Assembly (NCBI GenBank): GCA_964247055.1
Contig: OZ176060.1
Coordinates: 558,001-622,000, forward strand
From: Paragordius varius
Taxonomy: Eukaryota > Animalia > Nematomorpha
Reading direction: 5' to 3'
Length of the DNA: 64,000 nt
Shown: positions 10,748 through 64,000 of the stretch, one piece after another
How the letters are laid out: every line of letters begins with the position of its first letter
Position numbering within the stretch: the stretch's first letter is position 1
Program-made: the position numbers and the translations under genes
Notes under the pieces: model-generated
What the model saw: only the letters and a program-made list of their open reading frames with translations
What the model was told of the DNA's origin: nothing
Database searches by the model: none

Positions 10748-11550
10748 ATTTTGGCGACTCAACTTGCAAACTTTGGTGTGATCTCGATACTAAGCTTTAT
10801 AAAGTACAACTCAAAAATCAACAAGAAACGTATATTGATGATCCATCTAAACCGGCATCTTTTATCAATTTATTGGAAAATAAATGTTTCACAAATGAGG
10901 ATTTACGGAGAATTCTTAACGCTTCTTTCCATATCCTTTGTTATTTAAGGGAACAGAAAAGTGAAAATACTCTACAAAATAATATTTTGAATGATGAAAA
11001 TACCGAAACCATCAAAGATACCCTAATTATTGATTTGGTAGGAGAACAGACGGAACCTTTAGATCTTTCTCTAAGAAAATCACCAAAAAATGTAAAAGAT
11101 ATAAGCTCGATATCTTCAATCATTGATTCCGGTAACATAAGCTTGAATTATATTAACAAGCTATTTGATGATAGTAACAAAAAACTTATTAAATCTTTAC
11201 ACGTTTCGAAATTGGAGAATTGTTATCGATGTATTCAATGTGATAATATTTATAAATATAAACATGTATTAGCCAGACATATTAGTTCTGTTCATGAACA
11301 AGTGAAATATCCGTGCAAAATTTGTTCAAAAATCTTTTCTAAAGGTAATCTTGCTAGGCACATTAAGTCGGTTCATGAGAAAATTAAACATGAATGTCCG
11401 ATTTGTAAAAAAGAATTTACTCAAAAATGCCATCTTGCAACACACATTCATGCTGTTCATGAGAAAATTACATATAATTGTAAGATTTGTAAAAAGGAAT
11501 ATACGGACAAACACTATCTTAACAGGCACATTAAAAATGTACATAATTGA
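10748..11550 (+). CDS. ZF-family copy A, terminal exon (N-terminal region, PLDLS, 4 C2H2 fingers); first exon not found
   Basis: Acceptor ttttag|AT at 10747/10748; open frame FGDSTCKLWCDLDTKLY...EPLDLS...4 x CxxC...HxxxxH, TGA at 11548-11550. No in-frame ATG in the exon, and the family exon-1 block is absent upstream. Confidence 0.75.
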
Positions 11551-11894
11551 ACACTTTATAATATAATACATGTAGCATTTGTTCACATAATATATTTTGT
11601 TTTAAAATTATGATTTTCGCATATGATATATATTGAGATTAATGTTATTTTATGAAGTTTTGCAAAATGCATCGTTAATAAAATATTTGAAATGCTATTT
11701 GACCGCTCTGTTCTGGACCTTTTTTTTGTAGAAAAAAAATTACAGTAAAAATCAAAATTATACCTTTAAAACCTATAATTATAAACACAAATATTTTTTT
11801 AGGACAACCATAATTTTATCTCCTTGATTTTCTAAATTATAACTGATTGGCCTACATTGCAGATTGTAAAATAGAGTTTAATTCGTATCAAATC

Positions 11895-12400
11895 CTAGAA
11901 CACTTCAAGTTGGTCCTTGAACGTTTCAGGTTGGTCTTTGAACATTTAAAGTAGTTGATCCATAAATACTTAGAATTAGTCATTTGACATTTTTGTTTGT
12001 TTATACCTTTTGTCAATCAAATCGTTAATCATTCATCTATTTATCGTTTTTAACTTATTTTCTATTACTAACATAAATTTTAAATCAATATCAACTTTTA
12101 ATAATTGAAAAACCGTATAGCTTTATTATTTTCTTTAAATTATTTAGGATATTTAAGATGTTAACACTTAATTAAAAAATATATAAGTTTGCTTGGTTAT
12201 TATTTTCAATTTCGAAGACAATTAAAAGTCAATAATTTTGTTAAATGGAAAAAATAGTTTGAGACAAAATGGTTTTAAAATAAAAAATTTTATATTATGT
12301 GTATAATATGTATAAAAAGGTAGGTTAAAAATCATAAAATACATAAAAATATTTTAAGGACCAACTTGAAGTGTTCAAGCACACTCTTGAAGTGATGGTA
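11895..12400. mobile_element. MITE family 2 copy (TIRs built from 21-bp repeats), left end eroded
   Basis: ttcaagttggtccttgaac repeats at 11903-11970, inverted copy near 12355-12395, internal sequence alignable to 31690-32115. Confidence 0.7.
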
Positions 12401-12967
12401 TATGATAAGCATAACATATTCATATATACTACTAAACTATAGCCAATGTGTTTAGATCACCTCATAATATATATTTCTGGTTAAATATATATATATATAT
12501 ATTTAAATATTTAATTATCTAAACTAATTCAAATTTTTAAAAAGGAACTAAGGAGATTAAATGTTTTATTATGGCTATCAAAACTAACTATTTTATCTAA
12601 AATATGTAACATAAACCTCAGACACATTGTAAAAACTTATTATAATAAAAATAAATTTATTTTAATAAAATTCTAAGGGTTAAATAGGCAAAGATTATAG
12701 TTTTTAGGAAAACAATCAAGAGATTACACATAGTAGAGTTAAAAACCCAAAAGTTTAGTTTACACAAATAAGTTGTATATATTTTGGCATTTGTTTCGTA
12801 TGAATAAATATTTTCAAACATTACACATAAAATTTCAAATTAATCAACTGCTCTATCGTATATTTATATCGTCAAACAAAATAAAAATGAGAATAAATAT
12901 TGGCAAAATGTAAAAATATAAAGACAAATATTTTTTAAAAAACACCATGCTTTTTAAATCTTGATAA

Positions 12968-12970
<3 letters not shown>

Positions 12971-13030
<60 letters not shown>
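12971..13030. repeat. (AT)30 microsatellite
   Basis: Perfect AT dinucleotide run; shorter runs near 18885, 24868, 25907 and 28266. Confidence 0.95.
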
Positions 13031-13032
<2 letters not shown>

Positions 13033-14539: not shown

Positions 14540-16450
14540 AATTTAAAACTAATATGCGGGCCTTATTAAATCTATAAAATATTTGATCTATTTCTTTCGT
14601 CAATCAATCATTAACATTAATAACTATTTAAAAGTGTTCTTTTTATATTAAGAGTTATGTTAGCCAAAAATTAAAAATAGTTTGTTGAAGTATGAGGACT
14701 TCACAAACGATGATAAACGACCTATAATTTTATTAAATTAATGTTTTATGACATTTTTTTAGCAATAATTCAAGAGCGATACTAATACAATAATTAAGCA
14801 TATAAAAAATTATCAATTAAAGTCTTAATATTGATAAAATATCATAGTAAATTTTTTATAGAATATATTTGCCATCTATTTATGAAATCGGATAAATTAA
14901 TTTAACATGGATGGAAAATATATATTTAATTAAAATCTTTCATTATAAACATTTAGCAGCTGTCAAAAGCGAATTATGCATTTTGATCGTAGAGAATATA
15001 TTATTTATAAAATAAAAATTAAAAATACGGACAAAAGGTAGAAAGTTTTTTACAAAGATAACCATATTTTTTCAAAATTTTTCATTGCGTTACGATTTAC
15101 ATTTCTATTTCAAACTTTGAATTTAAAACAAAGAGTTATATTAAAATGTCTAAGAAAGTACAACGTTTTGAAAAAAAAAATTTATTTATACTATACGTTT
15201 ATCCTTATATATATAATTTTATATGGGATATCATTGTAGGCTGGATTATATCTGGGCATTTTATTTTTAATTTTTTATTTCTAAGTTTATTTACAAATAA
15301 GAACCCTAATTATATGTTGTTAAATCTATTATTTTTTGTTAATTTTTATTTTGATGCTATTCTTTTTAGAATAAAATACACATATATCGCCAAAAATTTT
15401 ATAAATAATTATTTTATTAATTTTATTTATTTCTATCCAAATATCTCGTTTTAGTTTATTTGTTCTCGGCCTTTAAATGTGTGTAATAAGTAATCGGCTG
15501 AAACTTAAGCTGACAATTACTTTGAAAAAAGCGTGACACGCCTAAACCCTATATATTTGTTTTCAAACAAAATTCAGGGTATATACAGTTCCCACTTTAA
15601 TGTTGGTCACTTTTGTGTCAGAAACATTTTTCCCATAATTAAAACATTAGTTTTGATCAATTTATGAAGAAAATTTATATCATATACTATATGTCTTACA
15701 GGGCCAACAGTAAAGTGAAGAATGTACAGTAATATTTAAAATTTACTGATAAATTGTAAATATAAAGAGAAATTTTTTAAAAAAACAACCATAAATAAAA
15801 TACTTTTTCCCATAAAAATTATTTGATTAGAAATTAATATGTTAAGAATTTAACTCTCTTTCACAATCTACATGTAAAACAATCAGTTATAATTAAGAAA
15901 ATCAAGATATAAAAATTATGGTTATCTTTAAATAAATGCGTTTTTATTATTACGTTTGGTATAATTTTTTACTGTAATTTATTTATTATACAAAATTAAA
16001 CTTTAGAACCGAACGGTCAAATAGCATTTCAAATTTTTATTAACGATGCATTTTACAATAAACGTATTATAAAATAAATGAATCCATTATATTATATTTG
16101 CGAAGTGGATATTTAACCAAAATTATATTAAATGCTACATTTAATATATAATATATATGTTAAATTTAGTGTTAAATTATGTACATTTTTAATATGCCTG
16201 GCAAGATTGCCTTTTCTGGTATATTCCTTTTGGCAAATTGAACATACATGTTCAATTTTTCTGTGAACAGATTTTATGTGCCTTCCAAGACTTTCTTTTT
16301 GTGAAAACTGTATTTGCAAATCGAACATTCATGTTTAATTTTCCTTGAACACTCTGAATGTGCCTAGCAAGATGGCATTTTTGAGTAAATTTTTGCAAAT
16401 CGCACATTCATGTTTAATTTTCTCATGAACTAAATAAATGTGCTGAGTAA
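14540..16450. repeat. Segmental duplication paralogous to ~48560-50400
   Basis: Shared blocks in the same order (gaagtatgaggacttcacaaacgatgataa, gccatctatttatg, 3' flank module, minus-strand ZF 3' end). Confidence 0.8.
16128..16450 (-). pseudogene. ZF-family copy H, 5'-truncated (last 3 fingers only)
   Basis: Fingers ending QKCHLARHIQSV, QKESLGRHIKSVH, RKGNLARHIKNVH with frameshifts; family TGA changed to TTA as in copy F; cut at ~16450 by an unrelated repeat also seen at ~63580-63790. Confidence 0.85.
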
Positions 16451-17269
16451 TAGAGCGTTTGTTAAAAACGCAATAAACTGTAAATGGTGCATTTAAATAG
16501 ATCTGATGAAAAAGTTATTTAGGTTCATATAGAGTTTAATCCTTAAATAAGTCAAAAATTTTCCGACAAACTAATTTAAAAATCATATTAAATATTTTAA
16601 TAATTTAGGGTTACATTAGTAAAATTAATAAAGAAATTTGTAAAAGCTTACGGTTCGCTTTTTAATAAAGTTTTTAAAATCATTCCTAGTGGATGAATAT
16701 TAAAGTCAAAGTTATTACTGTAAATTTATTACATAATCGTTGAAAAATAAAAACATCTTATACTTTTTTTTTAATTAAAAAAAATTTTAAAAGCAAAAAA
16801 CTTAAAATATAGCTGTTTTAACATGTCCAATATTAACTATCAATGTAAAGCATATTAATATGCATCTTATAGAGTTTTCTATTCTCTCGAATGATATATT
16901 ATATTTGGGCATTTATTGTATTTTTAACGAAAAACATTTTTTAGTAAAATTTTGATAAAGAAGGCGCATAAAAAAATCTAATCATGCAAAATTCTTAGGT
17001 GAAATAAAATTTTTATATTATATTGTTAAAATAATGGTTATATGCAAAAAACTCGAGCGACAGAATAATTTGTAGTTTAGTTTTTTTCATTTATATACAG
17101 TTAGATAGTCTTCGATTGATTGTTGTTTGTTCTATTTAAAAATATATATCATAGTATTTTAAGTTGCTGCATATAAATAATATATTATGTTATCAGTTTT
17201 AAAGATGTTTTGAAGGATTTATTATTTAATTTAAACATTATCCCTTAGTATAAGAGAATCAATAAAGAG

Positions 17270-18610: not shown

Positions 18611-18880
18611 TTTTTATAAATAATCGTTTTAGTAAATACCAAATCTGAAATATACACACCAAACTATATATCAAAACAAGTGTTTTTCCTAAAGACAATC
18701 ATTTTCATTGAAACATTGATTTTTTGCCAATTTATTGTATATAATTGGGTGTAATACATTTCCTACCAATTTTTCAACCAAATACGATAAAGAATATTTA
18801 AAATAATTAATTTGAAAATATATTTGTCTTTATTTATTTGTCCCTATAATTACAATTTTTACAAATGGTAATTTTATACC

Positions 18881-18911
<31 letters not shown>

Positions 18912-19188: not shown

Positions 19189-20068
19189 ATTTTGGCGATT
19201 CGACTTACAAACTTTGGTGTGATCTCGATACTAAACTTTATAAAGTAGAACTCAAAAATCAACAAGAAACGTATATTGATGATCCATCTAAACCGGCCTC
19301 ATTTCTTAATATGTTGGAAAATAAAGAATTCACAAACGATGATTTATGGAGAATTTTGAACGCTTCTATCCATAACCTTTGTTATTTAAGGGAACATAAA
19401 AGCGAAAATACTCAAGAAAATAATAATTTTAATGATGAAAATACCGAAACCATCAAAGATGCCTTAATAATTGATTTGGTAAGAGAACAAACGGAACCTT
19501 TAGATCTTTCGCTCAAAAAACCACCAAAAATTATAAAAGATTTTACCTCGGTATGTTCAAATGTTGCTTCCAATGACATAAGCTTAAATGATATTAACAA
19601 TCTATTTAATAATAACAATAATAATACTAAACCTATTGGGTCCTTAAACACTCAAAAATTGGAGAATGATTATCTATGTTTTCAATGTGATAAAATTTAT
19701 AAGGGCTTGACCAAACATATTCGTTTTGTTCATGAACAAGTGAAATATCATTGCAAAATTTATTCGAAAATGTTTTCTAAAGGCAATCTTGCTAGGCACA
19801 TTAAGTCGGTTCATGAAAAAATTAAACATAAATGTCCGATTTGCAAAAAGGAATATACTGGAAAAGGCAATCTTGCAACACATATTCAGGGTGTTCACAG
19901 GAAAATTAAATATTCATTCAAAATTTGTTTGAAAATGTTTTCTAAAGGCAATCTTGCTAGGCACATATATTCGTTCATGAGAAAATTAAACATGAATGTG
20001 CGATTTGCAAAAAGGAATATAACGAAAAAAGCAGTCTTGCCAGGCATATTAAAAATGTACATAATTGA
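19189..20068 (+). pseudogene. ZF-family copy B, terminal exon with damaged fingers; exon 1 missing
   Basis: Acceptor ttttag|AT at 19188/19189; N-terminal region and PLDLS intact; finger 1 shortened, Cys to Tyr and Cys to Phe in fingers 2 and 4, frameshift before finger 5; ancestral TGA at 20066-20068. Confidence 0.85.
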
Positions 20069-24866: not shown

Positions 24867-24903
<37 letters not shown>

Positions 24904-25846
24904 TCCAATGCGGTCCAGGAAGCTAATTAATTTATTCAAAAGTTAGTTGAAGCTTACTTTATTCTATTACGAACATGATAAGATGTGCCTAAAAATTTTA
25001 ATTGTTTTAATCGCCTTTAAATACAAGTTAATTATAACTGAATATTAAAACTAAATATCCAAATTCAAAAACAATCTAACTTTTAAATCGAAATTCTGAG
25101 GTAATTGAAATGTTCGAAAGTATTTTATCATATCTTAAAAAATAGTTAGTTTACGAGAAAAATCTTTCCATAAAGTATGATGGTTTTTTTCAAAAGGAAT
25201 TTCAATTTAAAGTTTTGGTTGTATAATTATAATTTTTAATGTGTTAAAAGAATATTTTATTTAGAGTTTGATGTAATAAAATTTTGTATAGTAATATATG
25301 CAAAACTTGTATTTAGGTCAATTTTGTAAGATATATTTTCTCAATATTATTTATTATATTAAATTTTAATTAGAAAAACTAAAATATCAATTTATTCGAG
25401 CCAAAATTCTTTGGCTTTAAAATTTTATTTGCTGGGAAACATATAATTACTTAAAAATTAAAATATTTTTTTAAAAAAGGGCGGTTCCCATTTAATCATA
25501 TAATGTCATATAATTTATTTGTGATTCCAAAAATTAAATATTAAATATTTATTAAATACATTGTATTATTTAAATATTTGTAAAAAAATTTTTAAGTCAA
25601 TAAATGATTGACAATTAGCAAAATAAGTAATTTAATTAAAATTATTCAGAAATAAAAATTATATGTAAAAGAATAAAATTAAATATATAAATTAAATAAA
25701 TTAATAACAATATTTTTAAACCATAATATAATATAAAAAATTTTGATTTAAATATATAATGAAAGGACAGACGATTTTTCTTAACGGTTTTTTATTTATT
25801 GTCTGCTTTTTATTTTTTCAAAAAAATATTCAAATTTATTTGGAAA

Positions 25847-25901
25847 ATGGGTAATTATATATTTAATATTTAAGCAATATTATAAAATAAATTATTTTAT
25901 T

Positions 25902-25940
<39 letters not shown>

Positions 25941-27733
25941 AATATTTATTAATTTTAATATTATTATTTATAACTCTAATTTTTAAAAATAAATACAATA
26001 TTTTAAATATTTTTTTTAAATTAATTGAATATATTTTTTTGTGATTTAATATTGATAATTAACCTTTTTTAAAATATATTAGCATATTAAAGAGATTAAT
26101 AAATAAAGATTTTAATGATATTTTTAGGTTAATTTTTAAATTTTAAAATTTTGACATTTATTATTTATTATTTTGATATTATTTTTATTAATATTAATTT
26201 ATTCCATATATACTAATGTTTCATCTGTATATTCTAATCAAATCATGTAAAATTTATGTACATTTTAATTAGATAATTGATAAAATTATTTAAACTGATT
26301 TAATAATAATAAATTCTAGTTTTTTTATTTATAATTTTTCAGTTTTATTTTATCACGCTTTTCTTGAAAAAAATATTATGTTTAGATTTTAAAATTTTAA
26401 TATTAATTTATAATGTCATTTAGTGTTTTACAATTACCAATGATCCAGCTATATAAGCGACTTTATACAACTTTAGATGATTATAGATTATTTTACATAT
26501 TTTTTTTTATCAAGTCTAATTAGAGTTTATCTTTGCAAGGTTACTCAAATATTACAGTAAAAATTAAAATTATACGGAGAAAACGTAAATATATAAAGAC
26601 AAATATCAAAATATCTCTAATTCTAACTTGGCAATCCTAAACCGTGATATTTAAGTAAAAAAGCAACACTAAAAAAGTATGTGGTAACACAATCTATTAT
26701 ATATTTTAGACCGTAAGTAAATAATTTTTTTAGAAAAAAATTAATGTTTTAAAAATATGGTAATGTTTTAATAAAAAATTTTGTCTTTTTATTTCTTAAG
26801 TTTTCGCCTGTATTTATTTAGTAATATTTAATTAATGTCATTAAATTGATATTAAACCGGTTTTTGGCGTATGTATTTTCGTCTCGTCATTTACAAATCA
26901 TTTTTTATAAATAAATTTATTAGATTTTGGTGATTCGACTTACAAACTTTGGTGTGATCTCGATACTAAGCTTTATAAAGTGGAACTCAAAAATCAACAA
27001 GAAACGTATATTGATGATCCATCTAAACCGACATCATTTCTTAATTTATTGGAAAATGAAGACTTTACAAATGATGATTTACGGAGAATTCTGAACGCTT
27101 CTTTCCATAACCTTTGTTATTTAAGGGAACATAAAAGCGAAAATACCTTACAAAATAATAATTCTAATGATGAAAATACCGAAACCATCAAAGATAGCCT
27201 AATAATTGATTTGGTAGGAGAACAGACGGAACCTTTAGATCTTTCGCTGAAAAAAATCACCAAAAAGTATGAAAAAAATTACGCCGGTGTGCGACAGTAT
27301 TGATTCCAATGATATAAGCATGAATGATATTAACAATCTATTTGATGATAGTAACAAAACAAAACCTCATAAGTCTTTAAACTCTTCAAAAATGGTTAAT
27401 AATTATCGATGTATTCAATGTGATAAAATTTATAAGGACAAACATGTTTTAATCACACATATTCGTTCTGTTCATGAAAAAGTTAAATACTCGTGCAAAA
27501 TTTGTTCGAAAATATTTTCTAACAAAGGCAATCTTGATAGGCACATTAAGTCAATTCATTAGAAAATTAAACATAAATGTCCGATTTGTAAAAAGAAATA
27601 TACTAAAAAAGGCTATCTTGGAACACATATTCAAGCTGTTCACAGGAAAATTAAACATGAATGTCCGATCTGCCTTAAGAAGTATACTGGAAAAGGCATT
27701 CTTGCCAGGCATATTAAAAATGTACATAATTGA
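25847..27733 (+). pseudogene. ZF-family copy C: exon 1 ATGG (25847-25850), intron 25851-26923, exon 2 from 26924; frameshift just after PLDLS
   Basis: ggaaaATGG|gtaatt donor and attag|AT acceptor; extra A in the lysine run after PLDLSL; TAG at 27560-27562 after finger 2; 4 fingers recognisable out of frame. Confidence 0.85.
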
Positions 27734-43124: not shown

Positions 43125-43980
43125 TTAAAAATATTTTTCTACAGAAAATGTCGTATATTTGTATTCATTAATAAGAAAAAGATATGCAAAATAAATGTGA
43201 ACGATCTTATCTATCTTTGAATGTAAATTAAACAAAACTATTTATCACGTAATAATAGAATCATAATCGTATTTGTCAACCACTTAATAATTTTATATTT
43301 AATTATAGCAATAAAAGTACAGTTTATTCTTTAGAAGAGATGGATTTATTAAAATGGGCATTTAATATTAAAAATTCATTTACATGCCAAACTTTTACTT
43401 AGCGGAAAATCGCAAAATAAAGATGTCCCGATTAAAATATTTTTACTATCTTTCATGCTATCTTCTTAATATTTTTTTCAAAATATTCATGTTAAAAAAG
43501 GATTGACAGATTGTTTTCTCTGATAAATTAAATATATCATTAGAAATATTTGCATTATATTCTACGTTCTCAATAATAAATTTAATAATCTAAATCACAA
43601 AACATAATCAATCCGTCATTATTATTAATAAATAAAGTTTAGTAATTGAAAAAAGTATTATTATTTAGTAAGTGCAGGTTAAAAGTAAATCAAAATTAAT
43701 ATATAATATATTTTAGTTAAATATATTATTTAAATTATTAATAAATAAAATCGTAATTATTTAAAAATATTTAATACAACCTTGTAAGGTAAATTATAAT
43801 TATATATAAAATTTAAAAATATTAAAAATTTATTTTATTTTAAAATGTTTTAAACCCAAAAATAATTGAAAATAATTTAAATATTATGAAATGAAACAAC
43901 AGACGATTACATTACCAACAGTTTTTTAAATTGTCTGCTTTTTGTTTATTCGAAAAAAAATATTCAAATTTATTTGGAAA

Positions 43981-45922
43981 ATGGGTATTCATATTTCATC
44001 AAATATTTTAATTAAAATTTATTTAATTATATCATATTTTATTTAAATATATATTTTTTGTAATAAAATGTCAAAATAATTTGTTTTAAAAAAATTTAAA
44101 TATTTTTTATGATTTAATTTAATATTAATTATTTTGTTTTAAAATATTATAATAGAACCTATTATATCACTTATTGTTGATAGATAATATTTTTAGATTT
44201 GGAAATTTTGTATTAATTTTTTTGATATGATTCTATTTATCAATAATTATTTTTGGTTTCAAAAAATATATGTATAAAATTCCTATTCTAATTCAATGTT
44301 TTAACAAATACTCATCATAAAACATCAAGTTACCCAATATTAAAATTAATAGACGTTTTTATTTAAATAATTGGTAAAAATAATAAATTGGGTATAATAA
44401 TAATAATAAATATACTTTTGTTTTATATTCTTTATCATTTTTAAAACAGCTCCGCTTTTTTGAGAAAAATTTTAAATTTTTTGATTTTTAAACTTTTAAT
44501 TAATCTTCCATATAATAGTTGTTTCATTTGTGGGGTTGTTGTCTTGATAAAAATAAATTTATTACCAATCCGCGACTTTCTGCAATCTTTTATTAATATT
44601 AGATAATTTTTATTTTAAGTCAAAATTTTAGATTAAATCTAATACCGGTTAAATCCAAAAAACGTACAGATATAAGGGAAAAAACTAAATATATTTTTGA
44701 CAGCCATACTTTATATTATAGGACTCATGATATACAAAATAGGGGTTAGAGATGTAATTGATAATATAATGAATTTAAGATATCAGACATAATATTATAG
44801 TTTATGTTGAAAAGTATTTTTATAAACTTTGATTCCGTTATGTTTTTATTTTGTCTATATTCTTTCAACCATTACTCTATGATTTATGTATGCATCATCA
44901 TTTTATAGTAACTTGTTATAATTTGTTTGCAGCTTCCTTTCTTGTGTTGTTAGGATTTTTTGTTTCTTCATTGATAACTTGAGTTTTAAATTACATTTCT
45001 GAAAATTTTTTTAGATTTCGGCGACTCGACTTACAAACTTTGGTGTGATCTCGATACTAAACTTTATAAAGTAGAACTCAAAAATCAACAAGAAACGTAT
45101 ATTGATGATCCATATAAACCGGCCTCATTTCTTAATTTATTGAAAAATGAAGATTTTACAAATGATGACTTAAGACGAATTCTGAACGCTTCTTTCCACA
45201 ACCTTTGTTATTTAAGGGAACATAAAAGCGAAAATACTCTACAAAATAATAATTTAGAAGATGAAAATAAAAATAATACCAAAACCAACAAAGATACCAT
45301 AATTATTGATTTGGTAGGAGAACAGACAGAACCTTTACATCTTTCACTGAAAAAACCACCAAATATTATAAAAGATATTACTTCTGTATGCCGAAATATA
45401 GATTCCAATGATATAAGCATGGATAATATTAACAATTTATTTAATGATAGCCTTAATAATAATCCAAAACCTATTGAGTCCTTAAACACTCAAAAATTAG
45501 AGAATGAGTATCGATGTACTCAATGTGATAAAATTTATAAATATAAACATGTTTTAGCCAAACATATTCGTTCCATTCATGAACAAGTGAAATATCCGTG
45601 CAAAATTTGTTCAAAGTTGTTTTCTCAAAAAAGCTCTCTTACTGAGCACATTAAGTCGGTTCATGAAAAAATTAAACATGAATGTCCGATTTGTAAAAAT
45701 GCATTTACTAAAAAAGGCAATCTTGCATCATATATTCAATCCGTTCATGAACAAGTTAAGTATCCTTGTCCGATTTGCAAAAAAAATTTTTCTAGAAAAT
45801 GCCATCTTGCTAGGCCCATTCAATCTGTTCATGAGAAAATTAAACATAAATGCCCGATTTGCCTAAAGGAATATACTGAAAAAGGCAGTCTTGTCAGGCA
45901 TATTAAAAATGTAAACAATTGA
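43981..45922 (+). CDS. ZF-family copy E, only copy with both exons and an open frame: join(43981..43984,45015..45922), ~303 aa
   Basis: ggaaaATGG|gtattc donor, tttttag|ATTTCGGC acceptor, giving MDFGDSTYKLWCDLDTKLY...; motif is PLHLS; 5 finger units, 2 canonical and 3 lacking a His ligand (Y, P, N). Confidence 0.75.
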
Positions 45923-48475
45923 TGGTTAGCACAAAATTCAATCAATCTGTGTCCTCTCTCGTTTTTTATGCCCAAGCCCATGCCGCCCGTCATAGGAGGT
46001 GTTTTGTCTGTTCCGATGATTGAATTAAAATCGCCTAAGATAATTATGATATCCTTTTTTGAAATTTGGGAAATCGCCAAGTCGAGATCGCTATAAAATT
46101 TTTCACAGTCGTCATCGCTGTAAGAGGAGGTAGGTGCGTAAATTTGGAGGATAGTAATGATTGAATTTTGTGCTAACCATCGTTTCTTCGTCGCAAACAG
46201 CTTCTTTAAACAGCCCAAACGACGTCTATACACATGGCGTTCCCCGTGTCAAAGATACCGTAACCAAATTGACTTCATATTAGGTATGGTAAAATACAAA
46301 AGTTCATTTCATAATGTCAAATGCCTACCAGGATATGATTGCTACAGCGACCACAACCTATTGATCGCCAAACTCCGAATTAAATTACAACTTCCTAAAA
46401 CATCCAAACCCACAAGAACAAGATTAGAATATGATACAATCGACGACAAGTTTAGCACCGCTTTATCAAATCGTTTCGATTGTCTTGATCATAATTCCGA
46501 AAACTATCAGGATATAAACTTCTTTTGGAACGATATATATACAATCTGCCGAGACACAGCCGACGAATTCCTTCGGCCTCTCAAACGCAATAAAAATAAA
46601 ATAAAATTGTCAGCCAAAAGTCTCGAGATCGCAGAAAAGCGTAGAGACTCAAAAACCAAATGCAAATGGGATAAATACAAACAACTAAACAGTGAATTTC
46701 AGAAATGTGCAAGAGAGGACACAAATAAGTATTATGACCAACTATGTGAAAAATTAGAAACAGACGCCAAAAATAACCAAAACCTCTTTGCCCATGCAAA
46801 CAATATTATTCCACACAAAAAAGTTTTTTATAAGGGACCTATGAGAAACGACAACAACTCAATCGTCACTGAAAAAGACGAAATTCGCAAACTATAGCAC
46901 AAACATATAAACAAACTATACAATGTAAATAACCCCCCAACTATTAACGAACTTACTCAACAAAAAGAACCACCTATTATGAAAGAAGAAGTGGAACTCG
47001 CTATAAAACACTCTAGCACCGGTAAATCAGAGGGCCACAAAGACATCCCTACTGAAATAATAAAATACATTCCAATCGATATATTCACCAAATTATTTTA
47101 AACCATATTTGAGATGGAAAAAATTCCTGAGGATTGGTGTACATCCATTATGATTCCGATTTTAAAAAAGGGTAACCCAGAACTGTGTGACAACTATCGC
47201 ACCATAGCGCTCATAAACCAGGTGTCCAAAGTTTTTCTAAAAATAATACAATTTCGTCAAAATTCCATTCTTGACCCCGAAATATCCACGATTCAGGCTG
47301 GTTTTCGAAAAGGTAGAGGATGCCGAGATATGATATGTAACATGAGGTGGATAATCGAGAAACAGATCGAATTTAACAAAGAATTGCATATGTGCTTTGT
47401 CGATTTTTCCAAAGCATTTGATTCCATCCAGCACAATAAACTACGGAAAGCTCTAAAACAACTCGGAGTATCAACACATTTAATCAACATCATATTTTCA
47501 ATTTATTCAAATTCCACGGCTATAGTATCCACACCATACGGTATATCTGACCCATGTAGGGTACAAGTCGGCCTCCGTCAAGGATGCGTTTTATCACCAA
47601 TTCTTTTTAACGCATACCTGGAGTGCGTTATAAGAAATATCCCACAAACTTACGGCATCAACGTAGGTGGGAACCTACTTACATCCGTTTACTACGCGGA
47701 TGATACAGTCTTATTCGCAGACAGTGTAGACACATTATCGCAAGCCTTGCAAGTGTTTACAACTGAATGCAATAAATTTGGATTAAATATCAATTTCAAA
47801 AAAACAAAAGTCATGCAAATAAATCCGGCTCAAACCAATCCAATAATCCTCAACGGCAACCAGATCGAAACAGTTAGCAGCTACACGTACTTAGGTAGCA
47901 TTATTAATAATGAGAACAACTCTACGCCTGAAATAAAGCGAAGAATTGCTATTGCTAAAGCAGTAACTTTCAAATATAACAGGATTTGGATGTCACATGA
48001 CATTAAACTACAAACCAAAATCAGATTAATCAAAGTTACAGTTTTCCCCACATTCATGTATGGGGGAGAAAGCTGGACACTGAAAAAATATGATGAACGT
48101 CTAATAAATTCTTTCGAATTATGGGTTTGGAGGAAACTTCTTCAAACAAAATGGACAGACAAAGTTTCAAACACCACCATTCTAAATAAAATTAACCCAG
48201 AAATGTCACTTCTAGGCAGCTTAATACGGCAAAAACTCTCCTTCTTCGGGCACATCATGAGATCCAGCTCACTTGAAAAATCACTGATGCTGGGGAAAGT
48301 GAGTGTGCTCGTAAAAGAGGGAGAAGACGAACTCGTTGGATGGATAACATCAACAAAGAAGCCAACCAATCATTATCCGAACTAAACACCAGATCCGGTA
48401 TTCGCAGTGAATGGAGAAGCTTTATTTTGAATGTTGCAGTTAGTCTGAATTCACCTTAGCAAACAACAACAACAA
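45921..48475 (+). mobile_element. RTE/BovB-like LINE, 5'-truncated with inverted 5' segment (45921-46157), (CAA)n tail
   Basis: APE motifs QIYAPT...LGDFNS...NERG (minus strand) then FC..NSFFKQ..RLYTW...NQIDFI (plus); RT motifs NYRTIAL, FVDFSKAFDS, QGCVLSP, YADD; two in-frame stops (46895 TAG, 47099 TAA) and a 3' frameshift; aaacaacaacaacaa at ~48461-48475. Confidence 0.93.
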
Positions 48476-50253: not shown

Positions 50254-51000
50254 TTATACATGTATATTATAAAGTGTTAAATTATGTACATTTTTAATAT
50301 GCCTGGCGAGACTGCCTTTTTCGGTATATTCCTTGGCAAATCGGACATTCATGTTTAATTTTCTCATGAACTGAATAAATGTGCTTAGTAAGACAGCTAC
50401 TGCGAGAAAACATCTTTGAACAAATTTTGCACGGATATTTAATTTGTTCATGAAATGATTTATTATGAACATATAATCCCGCTCGCGTTTTATATACTTT
50501 GTTACATAGGATACATTCATACATTTTTCCCGAGCTCGCTATATTATTTTCCATTAGTTCAGACTTTACATTATTAAAATTATTATCAATATTACTCTCA
50601 TTTTTGCCATATAAATGCACATTTGGTCGAAATCGATTATTTTCTTTTACTTTTGGTGGTTTTTTCAGCGAAAGATCTAGAGGTCCTGTCTGTTCTCCTG
50701 ACAAATCAATTATCGAGGGATTTTCGTTGCTTTCGGAAACGTTTTGAATATCATCATTCAAATTATTATTTTGTAGAGTATTTTCGCTTTTATGTTCCCT
50801 TAAATAACAAAGGTTATGGAAAGAAGCGTTTAGAATTCGTCTTAAATCATCGTTTGTAAAATCTTCTTTTTCTAATAAATTAAGAAATGAGGCCGGTTTA
50901 GATGGATCATCAATATACGTTTCTTGTTGATTTTTGAGTTCTACTTTATAAAGCTTAGTATCGAGATCACACCAAAGTTTGTAAGTCGAATCACCGAAAT
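50254..51000 (-). pseudogene. ZF-family copy F (type-II linker), terminal exon; frameshift in finger 3; exon 1 missing
   Basis: Acceptor tttttag|AT at 51001/51000; open through GPLDLS and two fingers (TRAGLYVH, RSSCLTKH); small deletion after CPIC shifts the last finger. Confidence 0.85.
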
Positions 51001-52094: not shown

Positions 52095-53921
52095 TATACA
52101 AGTAAACCCATCACCAAGCAGAAGACAAGGAAAAATATAAAAGGATTAATAAGGAACTTAAAAGGCTTGTAAGATTGTTCAAAAAAGAAAAGATGGCATC
52201 ATTATATGAAGAGTTAAACAGTAGGCAAGGTTTAAACAAAGTTTTTAAAATTGCTCGACAAAGACACAGAAGAAAGCTGGACTTGCCCCCTTACGCGACA
52301 GCTATTAAAGATAAAAAAGGCAAATTACTCGTTGAGGAAGCGAAAATATTGAAAAGGTGGAAAGAATATTTCCAGGACCTTGAATTGGGCTTCAGTGAAA
52401 CAAGTTTACATAAAACACCAGATTATATATCTGCGCATATTGAAAGTATAACAAAAGAAGAAGTACAGGCTGGTTTAGAAGAGATGTCAACAAATAAGGC
52501 GGCAGGTCCCGACGATATGAACATAAACTGTTGGAAAATATTGTCAGAGAAAGGTATTGAATTTTTAGCGGATATTTTTTATAATGTAGTTACTACAGGT
52601 ACGATACCAACCAAATGGAAGGAGAGTTTCACTGTTCCCATTTTCAAGGGTAAAAGAGATATTAATGATTGTAATAATTACAGAGGGATAAGATTGATGT
52701 CGCATACAATGAAGTTATTTGAGAAATTACTAGAGAAAAGAATAAGAAAAATGGTTAGTATTGAGGGTAATCAATTTGGTTTTATTCCAGAAAAATCCAC
52801 CATTGATCCGATTCACGCAGTAAGAAGGCTAATCAAGAAGCATATAGAAATGAAAAAGGAGTTGCATGGTATTTATATTGATATTGAAAAGGCATTTGAC
52901 AGAATACGCACAATAAGGTGGAGCTTAAGACGGAAAAAGGTCCCTGAAAGTTACATAAAGATCTTAAAAAGTATGTACGAATCACACCAAACCAAAATTA
53001 AAACACACCAGGGAATATCAAGCCCTATTAAAATAAACGAAGGGGTCTATCAGGGGTCTGCAATCCGCCCGTTACTATTTATAATATGCATGGACGAAAT
53101 TTCAAAAGTAGGGCAACATGATGGCTGGTATTTTTTTTATGACCTAATAGTGCTGTCCGACGAGTTGCGTGAATTAAAAGAATCGGTGGGTAAATGTATT
53201 GATGTGTTACGACGATGCGGATTAAAAGTTAATAAAAAGAAAACGGAACTGATAAATTTTGGCGGGAAAAAACGAGAAATAGAATTAGAAGAAGGGTGGG
53301 TATTAAAAGGTCAGGAGGAATGCAAATATTTAGGAGCGATATTAGCAGCAGATGGTTCTTTAACACTTGATATTAATTTAAGAATTCGCAATATTTGGGC
53401 AAATTATAAAAGGATCTCAAGTGTTTTGTGCGACAAAAATATTGACCTAAAAGTAAAGGGTAAGATTTACAGTGCTGTTGTACAACCAACAATGATGTAC
53501 AACTCACAGACATGGGCAATAAAGAAATCAGAAGAGAGGCACTTTGAGGTTACTGAAATGAGAATGCTTAGATTGATGTGCGGTGTATCGAGGAAAGACA
53601 AGGTGAAGAATGTCTACATAAGAGGAAGTACGGAAATCAAATCGGTAACGCAAAAGATGATGGTAAATCGTTTAAGATGGTTTGGACATGTTGAAAGAAG
53701 AAATAAAAATTACATTGGTAAAAAGATTGATGATTATATTGTAAAAGGCAAGAGGGGAAAAGGGCGCCCTAAAACGCGATGGATAGATACAGTTAAGAGG
53801 GACATGGCAAAACTGAACCTAAAACGCGAAGACGCCTTAGACAGGGTTCTATGGCGAAATAGTTTACGGATATGACCGCTCGAAAGAGTGATATCATATA
53901 ATGTAATTATTATTATTATTA
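52095..53921 (+). mobile_element. RTE-clade LINE, 5'-truncated, 566-aa RT ORF lacking the catalytic (F/Y)ADD
   Basis: AAGPDD, WKESFTVPIFKGK.DINDCNNYRGIRLMSH, IDIEKAFD, QGSA, YLG, RWFGHV.R, GRPK.RW.D motifs; FFYDLIVL in place of FADD; (ATT)n tail at ~53905-53921. Confidence 0.92.
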
Positions 53922-57700: not shown

Positions 57701-59650
57701 TTAATTTTTATCAAAAGTTACTTGAAGCTTACAAGTGAATGGAACGGCATGGGTTCTAGACACTGAAAACCTTTCTTTTTTAATATTTTAAGGCCTTTAA
57801 ATATAAGTTAAATATAAATTGTATATTACAACTAATTACCCAATCTAAATATTTAATCAAAATTCTGAGGTAATAGTAAGGTTGCACCGAAGGTGATTTA
57901 TCATATCTATTAGAATATTTGGTTTATGCTTAAAAAATCATTGTTAAAAGTATGGTGAATATTTCTTAATAAATATTTGTATTCGTTTTTTTGTATAATA
58001 ATTTTGATTTGTTAACAAGATATGTTATTATTCCATAATTATATTCAATTTTGTATAGACTACCTTCATCATGTATTATATTAGGTGCAATTATTTTTAA
58101 AGAAATTATTTTTTAATATTATTAATTATATTAAATTTTAATTTTTTCGAGCCAAAATTCTTTGACTTTAAAACTTTGTTTGCCTGGAAACATATAATTA
58201 TTAAAAAATTAAATTATTTTTTTAAAAAATGGGGGTGTTCATTAAATCATAATCCAAATAAATCATACACTTTATTTTGCGATTCTAATAATTAAAAATT
58301 AATGTGTTTAAATATTTATGAAAAAATATTTAGGTCAATAAATGATTGACAATATATTAAAAGTAATCTATTTTTAAATTTAGAAATAAAAATTATATGT
58401 AAAAAAATAAAATTAAATATATAATTTAAATAAATTAAAAATATAATATTAAACCATAAAATAATTTTAAAAACTTTGATTTAAATATAAATTGAAAGGA
58501 CAGACGATTTTATTTCTAACGGTTTTTTTTGAATTGTCTGCTTTTCATTTATTCAATATTTTATTCATATTTGGAAAATGGGTATATTTTTATGAATTTT
58601 GTAAATTATTTTAATTATTTTAAATTATTTATATATATTAATTTGATTTTTATAAATTTTAATATTATTATTTATTAATTTTTAGAAATAATTTGAAATT
58701 AAAATTAAATTAAAATGTTTAATAAATAAAATATTTTTTTGTAATTTAATTTAATATTAATTTTCTTGTTTTAAAATTCTTAGCTTTAATTTATATATAT
58801 TTATAAACCAAAATTTAGATAATATTTTTGGATGATATTGTTAATTTTAAATTTTATTCTGTAATTTATAAAATAATTTTCAATTTTGAATGATTATTGT
58901 TATCCATTATTAATATTCATAAAATAAAATTTTATGATTTTTAAATATATATATATTTAAATCGTAAAAACGAAATTTAAAATCCATTTTAATGTAACAA
59001 TATATAACATCAGCCTGTATATTAATATTCATAACGATTTATTAGACAAAGAACTGAAAATATTTTATATAAAATAATAATAATAATAATAAATATACTT
59101 AAATTTTATTTTTCATATTTAAATTTAATTAAATTAACTTGAAAAATAATTTATTTTTTGATTTCAAAATCTCAATTAATCTTTCCTTATAAGAGTTTTG
59201 TTTTTTTAGTGTCATTTGTTTCAATTAAAAAATTTCACCGAGTTTTATAAGCGACTTAATGCAACCTTACAATTATATTCGATTTCTATTTAAGTGAAAA
59301 TTTGAGACTAAATCTAATTCCAATAAAATACAAATATGTACAGTTATAAGGGGAAAAAACTTAAATATTTTTTTTGACAGCCCTTATATTTTTTGGTACA
59401 GTCGTTATTTTAGCAAAATATGCCATAAAGATATAATGTTAATATAATCAATTCTAGATATCATATATAATATAATAGTTTCTGTAGAAAAGTGTAAGTT
59501 TAATAAACTATGGTTTTCTATCTAAAAAAATATTTTTCTTAATGCTTTTATCATTTGGTTTTTATCATTACTGTATTGTTTAATGTTTGCCAAGTTTGTA
59601 ATTTTTATAGTTAGAATAATAAATACAACTGAGTCTTAAGTCATTTTGGT

Positions 59651-60029: not shown

Positions 60030-61039
60030 GTAAAAACTGATATTATATGGACGCAACGTAAAAAATAAAGACAAATTTTTTATAAAAGATAACCATATTA
60101 TTTAATTCCTTATAGCCTGTATCAAATAAAATCGAAAAATATGTAATTGTACCAATGTTCATTTCTACTTTATCCTTTGCAATTCAAAGTTTTATATTTA
60201 AAATAACAAGAATGAAAAGTAGGGTTGTCTTTTAAAAAAAAATATTTGTCTTTATTACGTTTTCCGTATACGGCATTAGTAAATATATATTTCAAGAAAG
60301 TTATTAATTATTGCCAATAAAGAGAATTATTATTGGCCAATAATAATAAAAATTAGAAAAAATATATAAACCATTAATACTACCCTTTGTTGTATATGCT
60401 ATTTGGCAAGAATTAATAAATATCTAGCAATGTATAATTACTCCTTTAATTATTTTTACTGTATGTATGAATGTATCACATAATTCTTTACATTTAAATC
60501 AATTCTGTTAATTTAATTTTTAACGATATTATTATATATTAAAGAATAGTAAAACAATTAGATACAGTATGTAAGAATTTGACAATCTAATATTCATTAC
60601 TCCTCATAATGTTTCTTCTATAATTTGCATTAAATAATATAAAATAAAAACCATTTTTGAAAAAGAGTAAAATTGTGTTTACAACATAATTTATTGACTC
60701 AAAATCCCACCTCTTTAACTCCGAACAGCTTTATGATTTTGTGCTCTTCAGAAACAATAAATTGAAAAAATTTAAATTTTATATAGATCCTAATAGTTAA
60801 TAATCATTATGTCTACACTTTTTGTAATTTCACCCCTTTACTTCTTTTATGCGACAACTTTTTTTCGTGTACTACCATTATAAATAAAATTTATTTTTAG
60901 TTTTTCGAAATAGATTATACTATTATTTATGGAAAAGTACTTAATTTATAGATTAAATTTTATTTGTCGGTATTAAATGATAACAAAACACTGTTTTTAA
61001 CGTTTTAGCTCAATTATTTAATGAATATATTGCTTAAAT

Positions 61040-62000
61040 CAGTGGTACTCACGAAAAAAATTTGACGGGCCAAATTAAAAATATATTTTTTCGAGGGCCA
61101 GAATCTTATAATGGCAAATATTCCATAGCTATTTGACATATGCATATATACTCTAAATCAGCAAAATTAATTTTTTGCAGATCGCATGTAAATCCAAGTA
61201 AAAACTCGTTTTGCACCATTTAGTTTAAAATAAATATTTTGATAACAACATTTATTTTGATATTAACCAATAATTTTCGACAGATTTGGTTTCTCCTCAT
61301 GACAGACCCATCTTAATACGTCGCCCATATGATTATCGGTTAAGCGATTTCTGTATCTATTCTTGGGATACCTTATTTAGAATATGCTGTCCACGGGAAA
61401 CTTGAGAAAAAACAGTTAGGATATGAGCACATTTTTTATATTTTCATATTTATTTGGCACATCTTGCCAAAACCATACATATATTTCTTCTCTTCGATTC
61501 TCCTTATATATAGCCTCCGAATCGGAATAATTTTTAAAATCTACGAATTCTTCAATGATATGCGCCTGATCAAAACCGAGATGCTCAAGTTGCTTAATAT
61601 TGGATATATCCATACCATGGATTTTCCACGAGTTTTAAGCAATTTTTAATATTTCTTAGTCCTTCAAATCTAAATGTCATTTCATTAGATACAAATGCTA
61701 TATGATTGTCTATTTTAAATGATGGAAAATATAGGAGTATTTTATTTATAAATTCTTGTTTATATATTATTATTTTTTCTTTAAAAGCAAATATTTGATT
61801 AACAAATTGGGTTATTAGCTCCCTTGACGACTTGTATTAACTAAGTTTATTAATAATGTCGCAAAGGTAGGCTAATAAAACTCACCATTCACTAATGATT
61901 TCCTCGTCAAACTTTCTGTTATTTTTTATAAATAATAAAATTTCAGCCTTAAAACAAAAAATAAATTTTATAATCTGCTAAGGATTATCCATACTTGGTA
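61040..62000 (-). mobile_element. hAT transposase relic (GTF2IRD2/SPIN/Buster-like C-terminal half) with one terminus
   Basis: Frames KAEILLF...EW*VLLAYLCDIINKL...FAFKEKI...YFPSF...FRFEGL...ENPW, FWQDVPNKY, and KNRYRNRLTDNHMGDVLR...KPNL; terminus CAGTGGTACTC with gggcc subterminal motifs at 61040-61100. Confidence 0.85.
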
Positions 62001-64000
62001 TTTGATTTGGTAGGAGAACAGACGGAACCTTTGGATCTTTAGCTGAAAAAACCTCCAAAAAGTATAAAAGATATTACTTCGGTATGTTCAAATGTTGATT
62101 CCAATGACATAAGCTTGAATGATATTAATTTATTTAATGATATTAATAAAGCAAAACCTTTTGGGTCTATAAACTCTTCAAAATTGGGTAATATTATAGA
62201 TTTATTCAATGTGATAAGATTTACATGTATAAAAGCGGCTTGGCCAAACATATTCGTTCGGTTCATGAACACATTAAATATCTGTGCAAAATTTGTTCAA
62301 AAATGTTTTCTGCCAAAAGCAATCTTGCTAAGCACATTAAAATGATTCATGATAAAATTAAGCATGAATGTCCGATTTGCAAAAAAGAATTTACTCGAAG
62401 AGGAGATGTTGCAACACGCATTCATGCTGTTCATGAGAAAATTAAACATGTATGTCTGAATTGCCATAAGGAATATACTGGAAAAGGCAATCTTACTAAG
62501 CATATTAAAAATGTACATAAATGAATATCTTTTGTTAATATCTTATCTTTTTATATATAAAATATTTTGAGATTCTACGTATTTTATGGCGACCTTTTAA
62601 AAATGTATTAAAAACTACTTAATAATTAAATAAATATTTGGCTTTTTCTTGACTGGTCTGTTCTGGAGTTTAATTTTGTATCTTGAAAATCAATTACAGT
62701 GGCCAATTAGCTATATAGTAGCGTATGATATAAAACAAATTTTGTCCACAAAATAAATAAGTTTAGTGTTTCATCTAGAATTGTATATTTCACACCGTTT
62801 GTTGTTGTTTACTCACAGTTCCTGTATGGCCAATTGGCCTAAAATAATGTATTGGCCAACAATAAAATGGTCTAAGCTTTTTATTTAACTAATAAGTTCG
62901 GTTAAATTAGCGAGTCACGCATAAAAATAAATTTAACAATGTTGCATAAGTAACAACACATATAAAATAATAATCGTAAACTACAGTTTGTCGTGAAATT
63001 CGGCTTGAACAAATAAAGGCTTATTTTTTTCAAAACAAAAAGCGTTATATATTGTCATATTTTACCCAAATGATAATATTCCAATTAATTTATATCCCGT
63101 TCCTAAAGTTTTCTTTAAATTAAATTGGGGTCTATAAAAAATGTCATGATAAATATATACATATTCTGATAGGAAAATGTATCAGGATTATCATAAGGCT
63201 TTTGGTTTTGGTCCTCAGGATAGATTTAACAAAAGATACTTTTACACTTTTGTTGAATGATTCATTACACTAGACAACAAATTTTATCTTTTTTTAACTG
63301 CCATTCTTGTAAATTTAAAATTTATTTCTGCATAATTATTATATCTGAAAAGAAAATTGGTCTAGCATGGAAGAATTTTTTTTTATTAGAGTTTATCGAT
63401 AATTTTTGACCCCGATTTAACATTAGACTCGAAATTTCGAAAATTTAAAGTTTTAGATATGAAGCCAAGTATTTTATATCATTCGAAAGAGCGCAAAAAA
63501 CTGCATCTTTTAAATGGTAGTAAGTCATTTAAATCAATCGGATGTAAAAGTTATTTGGATTTATATGGTCGACATTTTCAATCCTTAAATAAGTCAATAA
63601 TTTTCACAGACAAACTAATTTGAAAATCATATAAATTATTTTAATATAATTATTAGGGTTATATTAGTATTTAATTAAAAAAAATGTTTGAAAAAGCTTT
63701 TGGTTTGCTTTTTTAATGAAAATCTTTATTATCATAAATATTTTACCTAGTGGATACTAAAATGCATAGTTATAAGTGTAAATTTATAACATGATGGCTA
63801 TAAAAGATCAACCTTAAACTTTGTTTATCTTTAAAATTTCGAAATTATCAGCCTTGTAAAGAAAATAAATTAATATTGAGGAGATGGTAATTTTAATAAA
63901 ACAAAACTTAAAGGCTGTTTTGAGTGACATCAAAGCAATAATAAAATGTTTTAATCAAAAAAACTTTCTTGTGTTATCTATTTTGGACATTCATCACCAA

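What the first reader, a model, noticed from the sequence alone, without database searches (positions are those of the whole stretch)
10748..62524. Candidate KRAB-ZFP-like repressor family: unassigned N-terminal region + PLDLS + variable C2H2 array, expanding among transposons
Seen: at least 8 paralogs sharing MDFGDSTYKLWCDLDTKLYKVELKNQQETYIDDPSKPASFLNLLENEDFTNDDLRRILNASFHNLCYLREHK, an Asn-rich linker, DL(V)GEQTEPLDLS and 3-5 fingers with non-TGEKP linkers (HEKIKHE). Established: PxDLS recruits the co-repressor CtBP, and KRAB-ZFPs (tetrapods) and ZAD-ZFPs (insects) pair a constant effector module with fast-evolving fingers in TE-rich clusters. Inference: this may be an independently evolved family of that kind, with an N-terminal module I do not recognise as KRAB, ZAD, SCAN or BTB.
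Basis: partly seen in the sequence, partly recalled or inferred. Interest (0 to 1): 0.8.

Follow-up and report, generated by a model that had tools for sequence, protein, structure and literature searches.

The report
Decayed cluster of PLDLS zinc-finger genes
This very AT-rich animal DNA holds nine copies or fragments of a zinc-finger gene that has a front domain with no known relatives and a short motif of the kind that docks the CtBP silencer; it behaves like the fast-evolving KRAB, ZAD and FiNZ repressor families, but every copy in this window is damaged.

Summary
The paralogs are real. Six copies carry the conserved ~75-aa N-terminal region. Three more are fragments, so the count is nine, not "at least 8 sharing the N-terminus". 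The leading Met is not contiguous with the rest. It sits on a newly located exon 1 that ends ATGG|GT, about 1.03-1.14 kb upstream, and joins an invariant TTTTAG|AT acceptor. Three copies plus one orphan have this exon.

The N-domain matches nothing:
- Pfam, PDB sequences and the ESM Atlas gave no hit.
- JGI metagenomes gave no relative.
- An exhaustive profile search of 1.84 billion proteins gave one weak, repeat-inflated hit.
- Two AlphaFold models were low-confidence and disagreed.

Selection differs by module (pN/pS, or dN/dS for the N-domain):

| Module | Ratio |
|---|---|
| N-domain | 0.04-0.47 |
| PLDLS block | 0.34 |
| zinc ligands | 0.08 |
| finger scaffold | 0.71 |
| DNA-contact residues | 1.47 |

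No copy here is intact. The lesions are nonsense codons, lost zinc ligands, frameshifts, PLDLS changed to PLHLS, and missing exon 1. No RNA contig matched. CtBP binding and transposon targeting remain untested.

Verdict: a partly dead cluster of a lineage-specific, probably CtBP-recruiting ZNF family, which is a new variant of a known kind. The scan already found this family on other DNA of the same genome (s1-298918, s1-252915 and others).

The parts
10748..11550 (+). c1, exon 2. The only copy whose frame is unbroken through four fingers. PLDLS is intact. Finger B has x11 spacing. Its N-domain is the most diverged. No exon 1 or intron motif lies within 2.5 kb upstream.
19189..20068 (+). c2, exon 2. 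PLDLS is intact. Finger A carries a deletion, finger B has Cys->Tyr, and a frameshift precedes the last finger. No exon 1 was found.
25753..25850 (+). c3, exon 1 core: a conserved hairpin-forming ~100 nt ending ATG(25847-25849)+G. The GT donor is at 25851. The intron runs 25851-26923.
26924..27733 (+). c3, exon 2. The N-domain is close to consensus, PLDLS is intact and all four fingers keep their ligands. It has a +1 frameshift in an A-run near 27250 and a TAA stop at 27560-27562.
35992..36093 (-). c4, exon 1 core (ATG 35995-35993, donor GT 35991-35990).
34043..34852 (-). c4, exon 2. PLDLS is intact. Finger A has Cys->Tyr, a frameshift follows, finger C has Cys->Ser, and finger D contains a stop.
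43880..43984 (+). c5, exon 1 core (ATG 43981-43983, donor GT 43985-43986). The intron runs 43985-45014.
45015..45922 (+). c5, exon 2. The frame is unbroken and there are five fingers. The motif is PLHLS, and three fingers lack a zinc ligand (His->Tyr, His->Pro, His->Asn). A retroelement starts right after the stop codon.
50281..51000 (-). c6, exon 2. The N-domain and PLDLS are intact, linker 2 is diverged, and two good fingers are followed by a frameshift. The stop codon is lost. No exon 1 was found.
16176..16460 (-). c7, a fragment holding fingers only, with frameshifts.
58486..58581 (+). Orphan exon 1 core (ATG 58578-58580) upstream of c8. The intron motif follows at 59251.
61995..62524 (+). 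c8, a truncated exon 2 with no N-domain. It has PLDL-stop, finger A lacks its first Cys, and finger C has His->Arg.
4524..4695 (+). c9, a 180-nt fragment of a c6-type linker 2.
47114..48385 (+). Reverse-transcriptase ORF (Pfam RVT_1, E 1.7e-35) of a retroelement lying 3' of c5.
52175..53875 (+). A second, different reverse-transcriptase ORF (RVT_1, E 1e-27; 28% identical to the first).

Best explanation
The window holds part of a large birth-and-death cluster of a lineage-specific, two-exon C2H2 zinc-finger gene family.

Gene structure: exon 1 carries the 5' leader, the ATG and one further base. An intron of about 1 kb follows. Exon 2 encodes everything else, in this order:
- a ~75-aa orphan N-domain;
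- an Asn-rich disordered linker holding the EQTEPLDLSLKK motif;
- a second conserved linker block;
- fingers in the order A-B-C(n)-D.

Most likely mechanism for intact family members: the fingers read DNA with specificities that differ between paralogs. The PLDLS peptide docks the co-repressor CtBP and brings its chromatin modifiers. The strongly constrained N-domain provides a second protein-protein function, either oligomerisation or a further cofactor.

Shown: the anatomy, the orphan status of the N-domain, the selection pattern, and the damage in every copy in this window.

Inferred: CtBP docking, repression, the N-domain's role, and any link to transposons.
For: - Six N-domain copies and three fragments, 78-88% identical in DNA.
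- The acceptor TTTTAG|AT is invariant. The exon 1 core ending TATTTGG(A)AAATGG|GTA is invariant in four places, and its phase joins exactly to M-D-F-G-D-S.
- N-domain dN/dS is 0.04-0.47. Pairwise pN/pS is 0.34 for the PLDLS block, 0.08 for zinc ligands, 0.71 for the finger scaffold and 1.47 for contact positions -1, 2, 3 and 6.
- The contact positions rank 8th of 3060 possible four-position sets.
- The PLDLS block is a local peak of DNA identity (0.87) between linkers at 0.61-0.78. It lies in a stretch that AlphaFold gives pLDDT below 40, as expected of a short linear motif.
- PXDLS is the established CtBP-docking motif of DNA-binding factors, including ZEB1 (PMC6068344).
- Parallel families with an orphan N-terminal sequence are documented, such as FiNZ (PMC10547256).
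- The duplicated units keep their intron and promoter-like core, and their homology fades gradually at the edges. This points to DNA-level duplication of a host gene.
Against: - No copy here is intact.
- No contig of the three putative RNA assemblies lies on c3, even at 80% likeness. These runs are small, and 'RNA' is only a guess for them.
- The splice model has no read support.
- The N-domain could not be folded with confidence (pLDDT 41.8 and 52.7, with different topologies), so its role is a guess.
- The contact-residue test uses 24 fingers from non-independent and partly dead copies.
- CtBP binding is inferred from a five-residue motif.
Confidence: 0.62

Rival explanations
1. Same family, but not transposon-directed. 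It would be a set of ordinary gene-regulatory or chromatin-architecture factors, as many insect ZAD-ZNFs are, whose clustering among repeats only reflects a repeat-rich genome.
For: No binding data exist. 46% of the window is repeated within itself, so any gene here would sit among repeats. A published horsehair-worm genome is 63.8% repeats (10.1101/2023.06.26.546503).
Against: Contact residues diversify fastest and turnover by birth and death is high. Both are typical of arms-race families (PMC10547256). Neither is proof.
Confidence: 0.3
2. PLDLS is not a working CtBP dock. The N-domain alone is the effector, and the motif block is conserved for another reason, such as nuclear import through the adjacent KKPPK.
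For: The N-domain is more constrained than the motif block. Five-residue motifs can arise by chance. An earlier unchecked note says this genome's CtBP is unusual (s1-373513).
Against: The motif is exactly P-L-D-L-S followed by x-K-K. It is kept in five of seven copies, inside an otherwise fast-changing, indel-rich linker.
Confidence: 0.2
3. The unit is a transposable element, or a passenger ORF carried by one, rather than a host gene family.
For: There are many copies on both strands, retroelement ORFs lie nearby, and very high-copy short repeats lie inside the intron and 3' flank.
Against: - The unit holds no transposase, RT, terminal inverted repeat or LTR, and the upstream motif has no inverted partner.
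- The copies keep a spliceosomal intron.
- The edges of homology differ from pair to pair.
- The N-domain is under purifying selection and the DNA-contact residues diversify.
Confidence: 0.05

Closest known systems
FiNZ-ZNF genes of cyprinid fish (Wells et al. 2023, PMC10547256)
   Same: A lineage-restricted ZNF expansion defined by a short N-terminal sequence with no similarity to known domains. It has adaptively evolving fingers and many copies.
   Different: FiNZ is 28 aa and Glu-rich, and its partner is unknown. Here the N-domain is ~75 aa and the protein also carries an explicit PLDLS motif. FiNZ expression and transposon derepression were shown experimentally, whereas nothing has been shown here.
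KRAB-ZFP clusters of tetrapods
   Same: A constant N-terminal module plus a variable finger array, tandem clusters with many pseudogenes, and diversifying contact residues.
   Different: There is no KRAB domain (Pfam negative). The predicted co-repressor is CtBP, not TRIM28/KAP1. There are only 3-5 fingers, with H-x4-H spacing and non-TGEKP linkers.
ZAD-ZNF genes of insects
   Same: An ecdysozoan lineage-specific expansion with an N-terminal module, and fingers that often have non-canonical linkers.
   Different: ZAD is a four-cysteine zinc-binding dimerisation domain. This N-domain has only two Cys and does not match zf-AD.
CtBP-recruiting zinc-finger repressors (ZEB1, ZNF366, ZNF516; PMC6068344, PMC1693901, PMC5612949)
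   Same: C2H2 DNA-binding proteins that carry PXDLS-type motifs in non-finger regions.
   Different: Those are conserved, mostly single-copy regulators. Here the motif sits in a multi-copy, fast-turnover family.

Membership tests
C2H2 zinc-finger proteins | Tandem C-x2-C-x12-H-x3-5-H units that match Pfam zf-C2H2 | tested here: met
   PF00096 scores E 2.2e-12 for c1 and 2.5e-18 for c5. 18 units keep all four ligands.
KRAB / ZAD / SCAN / BTB zinc-finger families | The N-terminal region matches the family's Pfam domain | tested here: not met
   Pfam gave no family at E<=10 for the 78-aa N-domain. Only finger families hit the whole exon.
ZAD | Four conserved zinc-binding cysteines in the N-terminal module | tested here: not met
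   Only two Cys are conserved, at positions 11 and 65.
CtBP-binding (PXDLS) transcription factors | A P-x-D-L-S motif in an accessible, non-globular region | tested here: met
   PLDLS is present in five of seven copies, inside a low-pLDDT, Asn-rich linker.
CtBP-binding (PXDLS) transcription factors | Physical, motif-dependent binding to CtBP and repression | not testable with these tools
This needs a binding or reporter assay.
Arms-race type ZNF families (KRAB/FiNZ-like behaviour) | DNA-contact residues evolve faster than the rest of the finger | tested here: met
   pN/pS is 1.47 for contact residues against 0.71 for the rest. The contact set ranks 8th of 3060. The sample is small and non-independent.
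Arms-race type ZNF families (KRAB/FiNZ-like behaviour) | Expression, typically early embryo or germline | tested here: inconclusive
   No contig of runs X5-X7 lies on c3 at 80% likeness. The runs are small and their RNA status is a guess.
Arms-race type ZNF families (KRAB/FiNZ-like behaviour) | Preferential binding to and silencing of transposons | not testable with these tools
   No binding data are available.

The most novel reading that the evidence does not exclude
Horsehair worms have built their own KRAB-like genome-defence system. It would be a large family of fast-evolving zinc-finger proteins that silence transposons through CtBP instead of TRIM28, using a new N-terminal fold as an oligomerisation or second effector module. 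The dead copies here would be the debris of that arms race.
Probability: 0.25. Interest if true: 0.65.

Novelty: new variant of a known kind. Interest (0 to 1): 0.45.

Why it matters
Lineage-specific zinc-finger families with their own effector module are thought to arise repeatedly in animals in step with transposons (PMC10547256). Few are characterised outside vertebrates and insects. A family whose effector is a recognisable CtBP-docking peptide would make the repression step directly testable with a simple motif mutant. It would also add a little-studied phylum to the comparison. The orphan N-domain is the most constrained part of the protein and is a candidate new protein module.

Tried and rejected
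**Searches for a relative or fold of the N-domain. None gave an assignment.**
- Pfam at E<=10.
- Word-indexed search of 5.8 billion proteins, residues 1-118.
- Exhaustive profile search of 1.84 billion representatives.
  - The single hit, P0001, is a 1135-aa protein made of 52-aa Trp-repressor-like helix-turn-helix repeats. Its E of 3e-7 is summed over 8 repeats.
  - hhalign gives only 42-44% probability. I keep it as a weak lead that residues 37-60 are helix-turn-helix-like, not as homology.
- PDB sequence profile.
- ESM Atlas by features, best score 0.78.
- JGI metagenomes.
- AlphaFold twice. pLDDT was 41.8 (all-helical) and 52.7 (three strands plus two helices), and the two models disagree.
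- Foldseek against PDB (best E 0.31) and the Atlas fold search (TM up to 0.52 to unrelated enzymes) on the second model. Both are meaningless at that confidence.

**Other negative results.**
- Rfam found nothing in the window.
- RNA evidence: three putative RNA assemblies gave no contig on c3.
- Literature: there is no paper on zinc-finger expansion or spliced leaders in Nematomorpha.

**Rejected readings.**
- A start codon inside exon 2: there is no in-frame Met before the fingers.
- The GTAAGT sites 140-220 nt upstream as donors: they are not shared between copies and have no conserved ATG in phase.
- Frameshifts as assembly errors only: most lesions are substitutions. The c3 TAA has its own read depth in the DNA run, although that run may be the assembly's own source sample.

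I searched exon 2 by reference only.
Full report
**Setting.** The window is 21-31% G+C. 46% of it is repeated within itself. Earlier notes of this scan call the genome horsehair-worm-like (s1-257465). I did not test the taxon. A published hairworm genome has 26.9% GC and 63.8% repeats (10.1101/2023.06.26.546503), which is compatible.

**Observation.** Six-frame motif scans and tblastn find six units with the conserved N-terminal region:

| Copy | Exon 2 coordinates and strand |
|---|---|
| c1 | 10748-11550 + |
| c2 | 19189-20068 + |
| c3 | 26924-27733 + |
| c4 | 34852-34043 - |
| c5 | 45015-45922 + |
| c6 | 51000-50281 - |

There are also three fragments:
- c7 (16176-16460 -) holds fingers only.
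- c8 (61995-62524 +) starts at the DLVGEQTEPLDL block.
- c9 (4524-4695 +) is 180 nt of linker.

DNA identity between units is 78-88%.
- the N-terminal region;
- the Asn-rich, indel-rich linker;
- the DL(V)GEQTEPLDLS block;
- 3-5 fingers of the form C-x2-C-x12-H-x4-H, with six-residue non-TGEKP linkers.

By DNA similarity the fingers fall into four types arranged A-B-C(n)-D.

**Gene structure (new here).** In all six copies conservation begins abruptly at an invariant TTTTAG|AT. No in-frame Met lies before the fingers.

A conserved core of about 100 nt lies 1.03-1.14 kb upstream of c3, c4 and c5, and once more at 58486-58581 upstream of the truncated c8. It ends in TATTTGG(A)AAATGG|GTA, and conservation drops right after GTA. 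ATG plus one G, followed by a GT donor, joins the acceptor in exactly the right phase (G+AT = Asp). This gives M-D-F-G-D-S.

I therefore propose two exons:
- Exon 1 is the leader, the ATG and one base.
- Exon 2 is all the rest.

The model rests on conservation and phase only, because no read supports it. c1, c2 and c6 have no such exon within 2.5 kb.

Two further conserved non-coding elements were seen:
- an inverted repeat in the exon 1 core (GACAGACGATT ... AATTGTCTGC), which folds as a hairpin;
- an intronic 18-mer, GCGACTTTAGGCAACCTT, with six matches against 0.03 expected.

**State of the copies.** None is intact.

| Copy | Condition |
|---|---|
| c1 | Unbroken exon 2, but no exon 1. It has a one-codon deletion in finger B and the most diverged N-domain. 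|
| c2 | Deletions and a Cys->Tyr in its fingers, plus a frameshift. |
| c3 | Has exon 1, a near-consensus N-domain, PLDLS and four good fingers. It also has a +1 shift in an A-run after the motif and a TAA at 27560-27562. |
| c4 | Two lost ligands, a frameshift and a stop. |
| c5 | Has exon 1 and an unbroken frame. The motif is PLHLS, three fingers lack a His, and a retroelement starts right after the stop. |
| c6 | Loses frame after finger B and has no exon 1. |
| c8 | Reads PLDL-stop. |

At the c3 TAA, the DNA run X1 shows G in the paralogs and about 370 units of depth for T. That is about twice the depth of unique contigs in this run. X1 may be the sample the assembly was made from, so this is not independent support. 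Most lesions are substitutions, so homopolymer assembly errors cannot explain the decay.

**Selection.** The values below are pairwise comparisons between copies.

| Region | Ratio |
|---|---|
| 74-codon N-domain | dN/dS 0.04-0.47, mostly below 0.2 |
| 18-codon PLDLS block | pN/pS 0.34 |
| Second linker block (DITSVCSNVDSNDISxNDIN) | pN/pS 0.46 |
| Zinc ligands | pN/pS 0.08 |
| Other finger positions | pN/pS 0.71 |
| Contact positions -1, 2, 3, 6 | pN/pS 1.47 |

Bases 31-90 of the N-domain are 97-98% identical between copies, while their linkers are only 54-78% identical.

Among all 3060 ways to choose four non-ligand positions, only 8 give as high a pN as the contact set. The pairs are not independent and some copies are dead, so this supports diversification but does not prove positive selection.

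The pattern means the ancestors of these copies were working genes. In them the front domain and the motif mattered, and DNA specificity was diversifying.

**What the N-domain is.** No assignment was possible.
- Pfam found nothing.
- The word-indexed protein search found nothing.
- PDB sequences, the Atlas and JGI metagenomes found nothing.
- The exhaustive profile search of 1.84 billion representatives returned one protein, P0001. It is built of 52-aa repeats that match the helix-turn-helix of Pfam Trp_repressor. The score is summed over eight repeats, and profile-profile probability is only 42-44%. At most this hints that residues 37-60 (ASFLNLLENEDFTNDDLRRILNAS) form a helix-turn-helix-like unit.
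- Two AlphaFold runs gave pLDDT 41.8 and 52.7 with different topologies. The fold searches on the second model were uninformative.

The database did not return the family itself, so it probably lacks this species' proteome. Absence in close relatives is therefore not established.

**Mechanism.** PXDLS is the established docking motif by which DNA-binding factors recruit CtBP (PMC6068344). Zinc-finger examples are ZEB1, ZNF366 and ZNF516 (PMC6068344, PMC1693901, PMC5612949). Here the motif is exact and followed by L-K-K. It sits in a disordered linker and is a local conservation peak. From memory, it resembles the adenovirus E1A PLDLSCKR site.

I could not test this.

I therefore rate CtBP-mediated repression by intact family members as the most likely mechanism (about 0.55-0.6). 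I rate a transposon-directed role as possible but untested (about 0.25-0.3).

The transposon-borne alternative is unlikely, for four reasons:
- The unit contains no mobility gene or terminal repeats.
- The copies keep a spliceosomal intron.
- The edges of homology vary from pair to pair.
- Selection differs by module, as expected of a host gene.

**Context.** Two different RVT_1 reverse-transcriptase ORFs (47114-48385 and 52175-53875) and an RT remnant (8107-8409) lie between copies. One element sits directly behind c5's stop codon. High-copy short repeats lie in c3's intron and 3' flank.

**Expression.** The only runs labelled as possible RNA (X5-X7, small 2017 assemblies) place no contig on c3, even at 80% likeness. 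This is weak negative evidence.

**Comparison and novelty.** The family behaves like KRAB-, ZAD- and especially FiNZ-ZNFs (PMC10547256), but it is a member of none. It is a new variant of a known kind. The same family has already been reported by this scan on neighbouring and other DNA of the genome (s1-298918, s1-252915, s1-257690 and others). One note estimates about 48 copies with about 10 intact elsewhere, which I could not check.

This report adds:
- the exon 1 and splice model;
- the lesion catalogue for this window;
- the quantified selection pattern for each module;
- an exhaustive negative search for relatives of the N-domain.

Noticed in passing
window 25766-25819; 36075-36022 (-); 43898-43951; 58499-58554: The exon 1 core holds a conserved inverted repeat (GACAGACGATT ... 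18-22 nt ... AATTGTCTGC). It folds as a hairpin with z-scores of -4.2 and -3.0 in two copies and weaker scores in the other two. It could be a 5'-leader structure or a palindromic promoter site. No covariation was seen, and Rfam found nothing.
   Followed up: partly
window 19012, 26457, 35319(-), 44572, 51189(-), 59251: An 18-nt motif, GCGACTTTAGGCAACCTT, is conserved inside intron 1 of five copies and the orphan (6 matches against 0.03 expected). It always lies in gene orientation, about 180 nt (c2, c6) or about 450 nt (c3-c5) from the acceptor. Its function is unknown.
   Followed up: partly
window 26474-26607 and 28082-28215: Two short stretches flanking c3's exon 2 have a summed contig depth in the DNA run 300-7000 times that of unique sequence, with joints between them on opposite strands. 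This points to a very high-copy short repeat, perhaps a MITE or satellite.
   Followed up: no
window 10777-10836 and equivalents in c2-c6: Bases 31-90 of exon 2 are 97-98% identical between copies whose linkers are only 54-78% identical, so synonymous sites there are also nearly frozen. Possible causes are gene conversion or an RNA- or DNA-level constraint on top of the protein constraint.
   Followed up: partly
window 11098-11157, 19539-19598, 27275-27334, 34493-34434(-), 45374-45433, 62070-62129: A second conserved linker block (DITSVCSNVDSNDISxNDIN, pN/pS 0.46) lies between PLDLS and the first finger. It is replaced in c6. It may be another short interaction motif.
   Followed up: partly
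window 10617-10690: Just upstream of c1's acceptor lies a G+C-richer insert with its own inverted repeats (GGCTCATTCAC ... GTGAATGAGCC, twice). It may be a small hairpin element that displaced c1's intron sequence.
   Followed up: no
P0001: A 1135-aa database protein is made of 19 near-identical 52-aa repeats, each matching the helix-turn-helix of Pfam Trp_repressor. This is an unusual tandem-HTH architecture, and its origin is unknown.
   Followed up: partly
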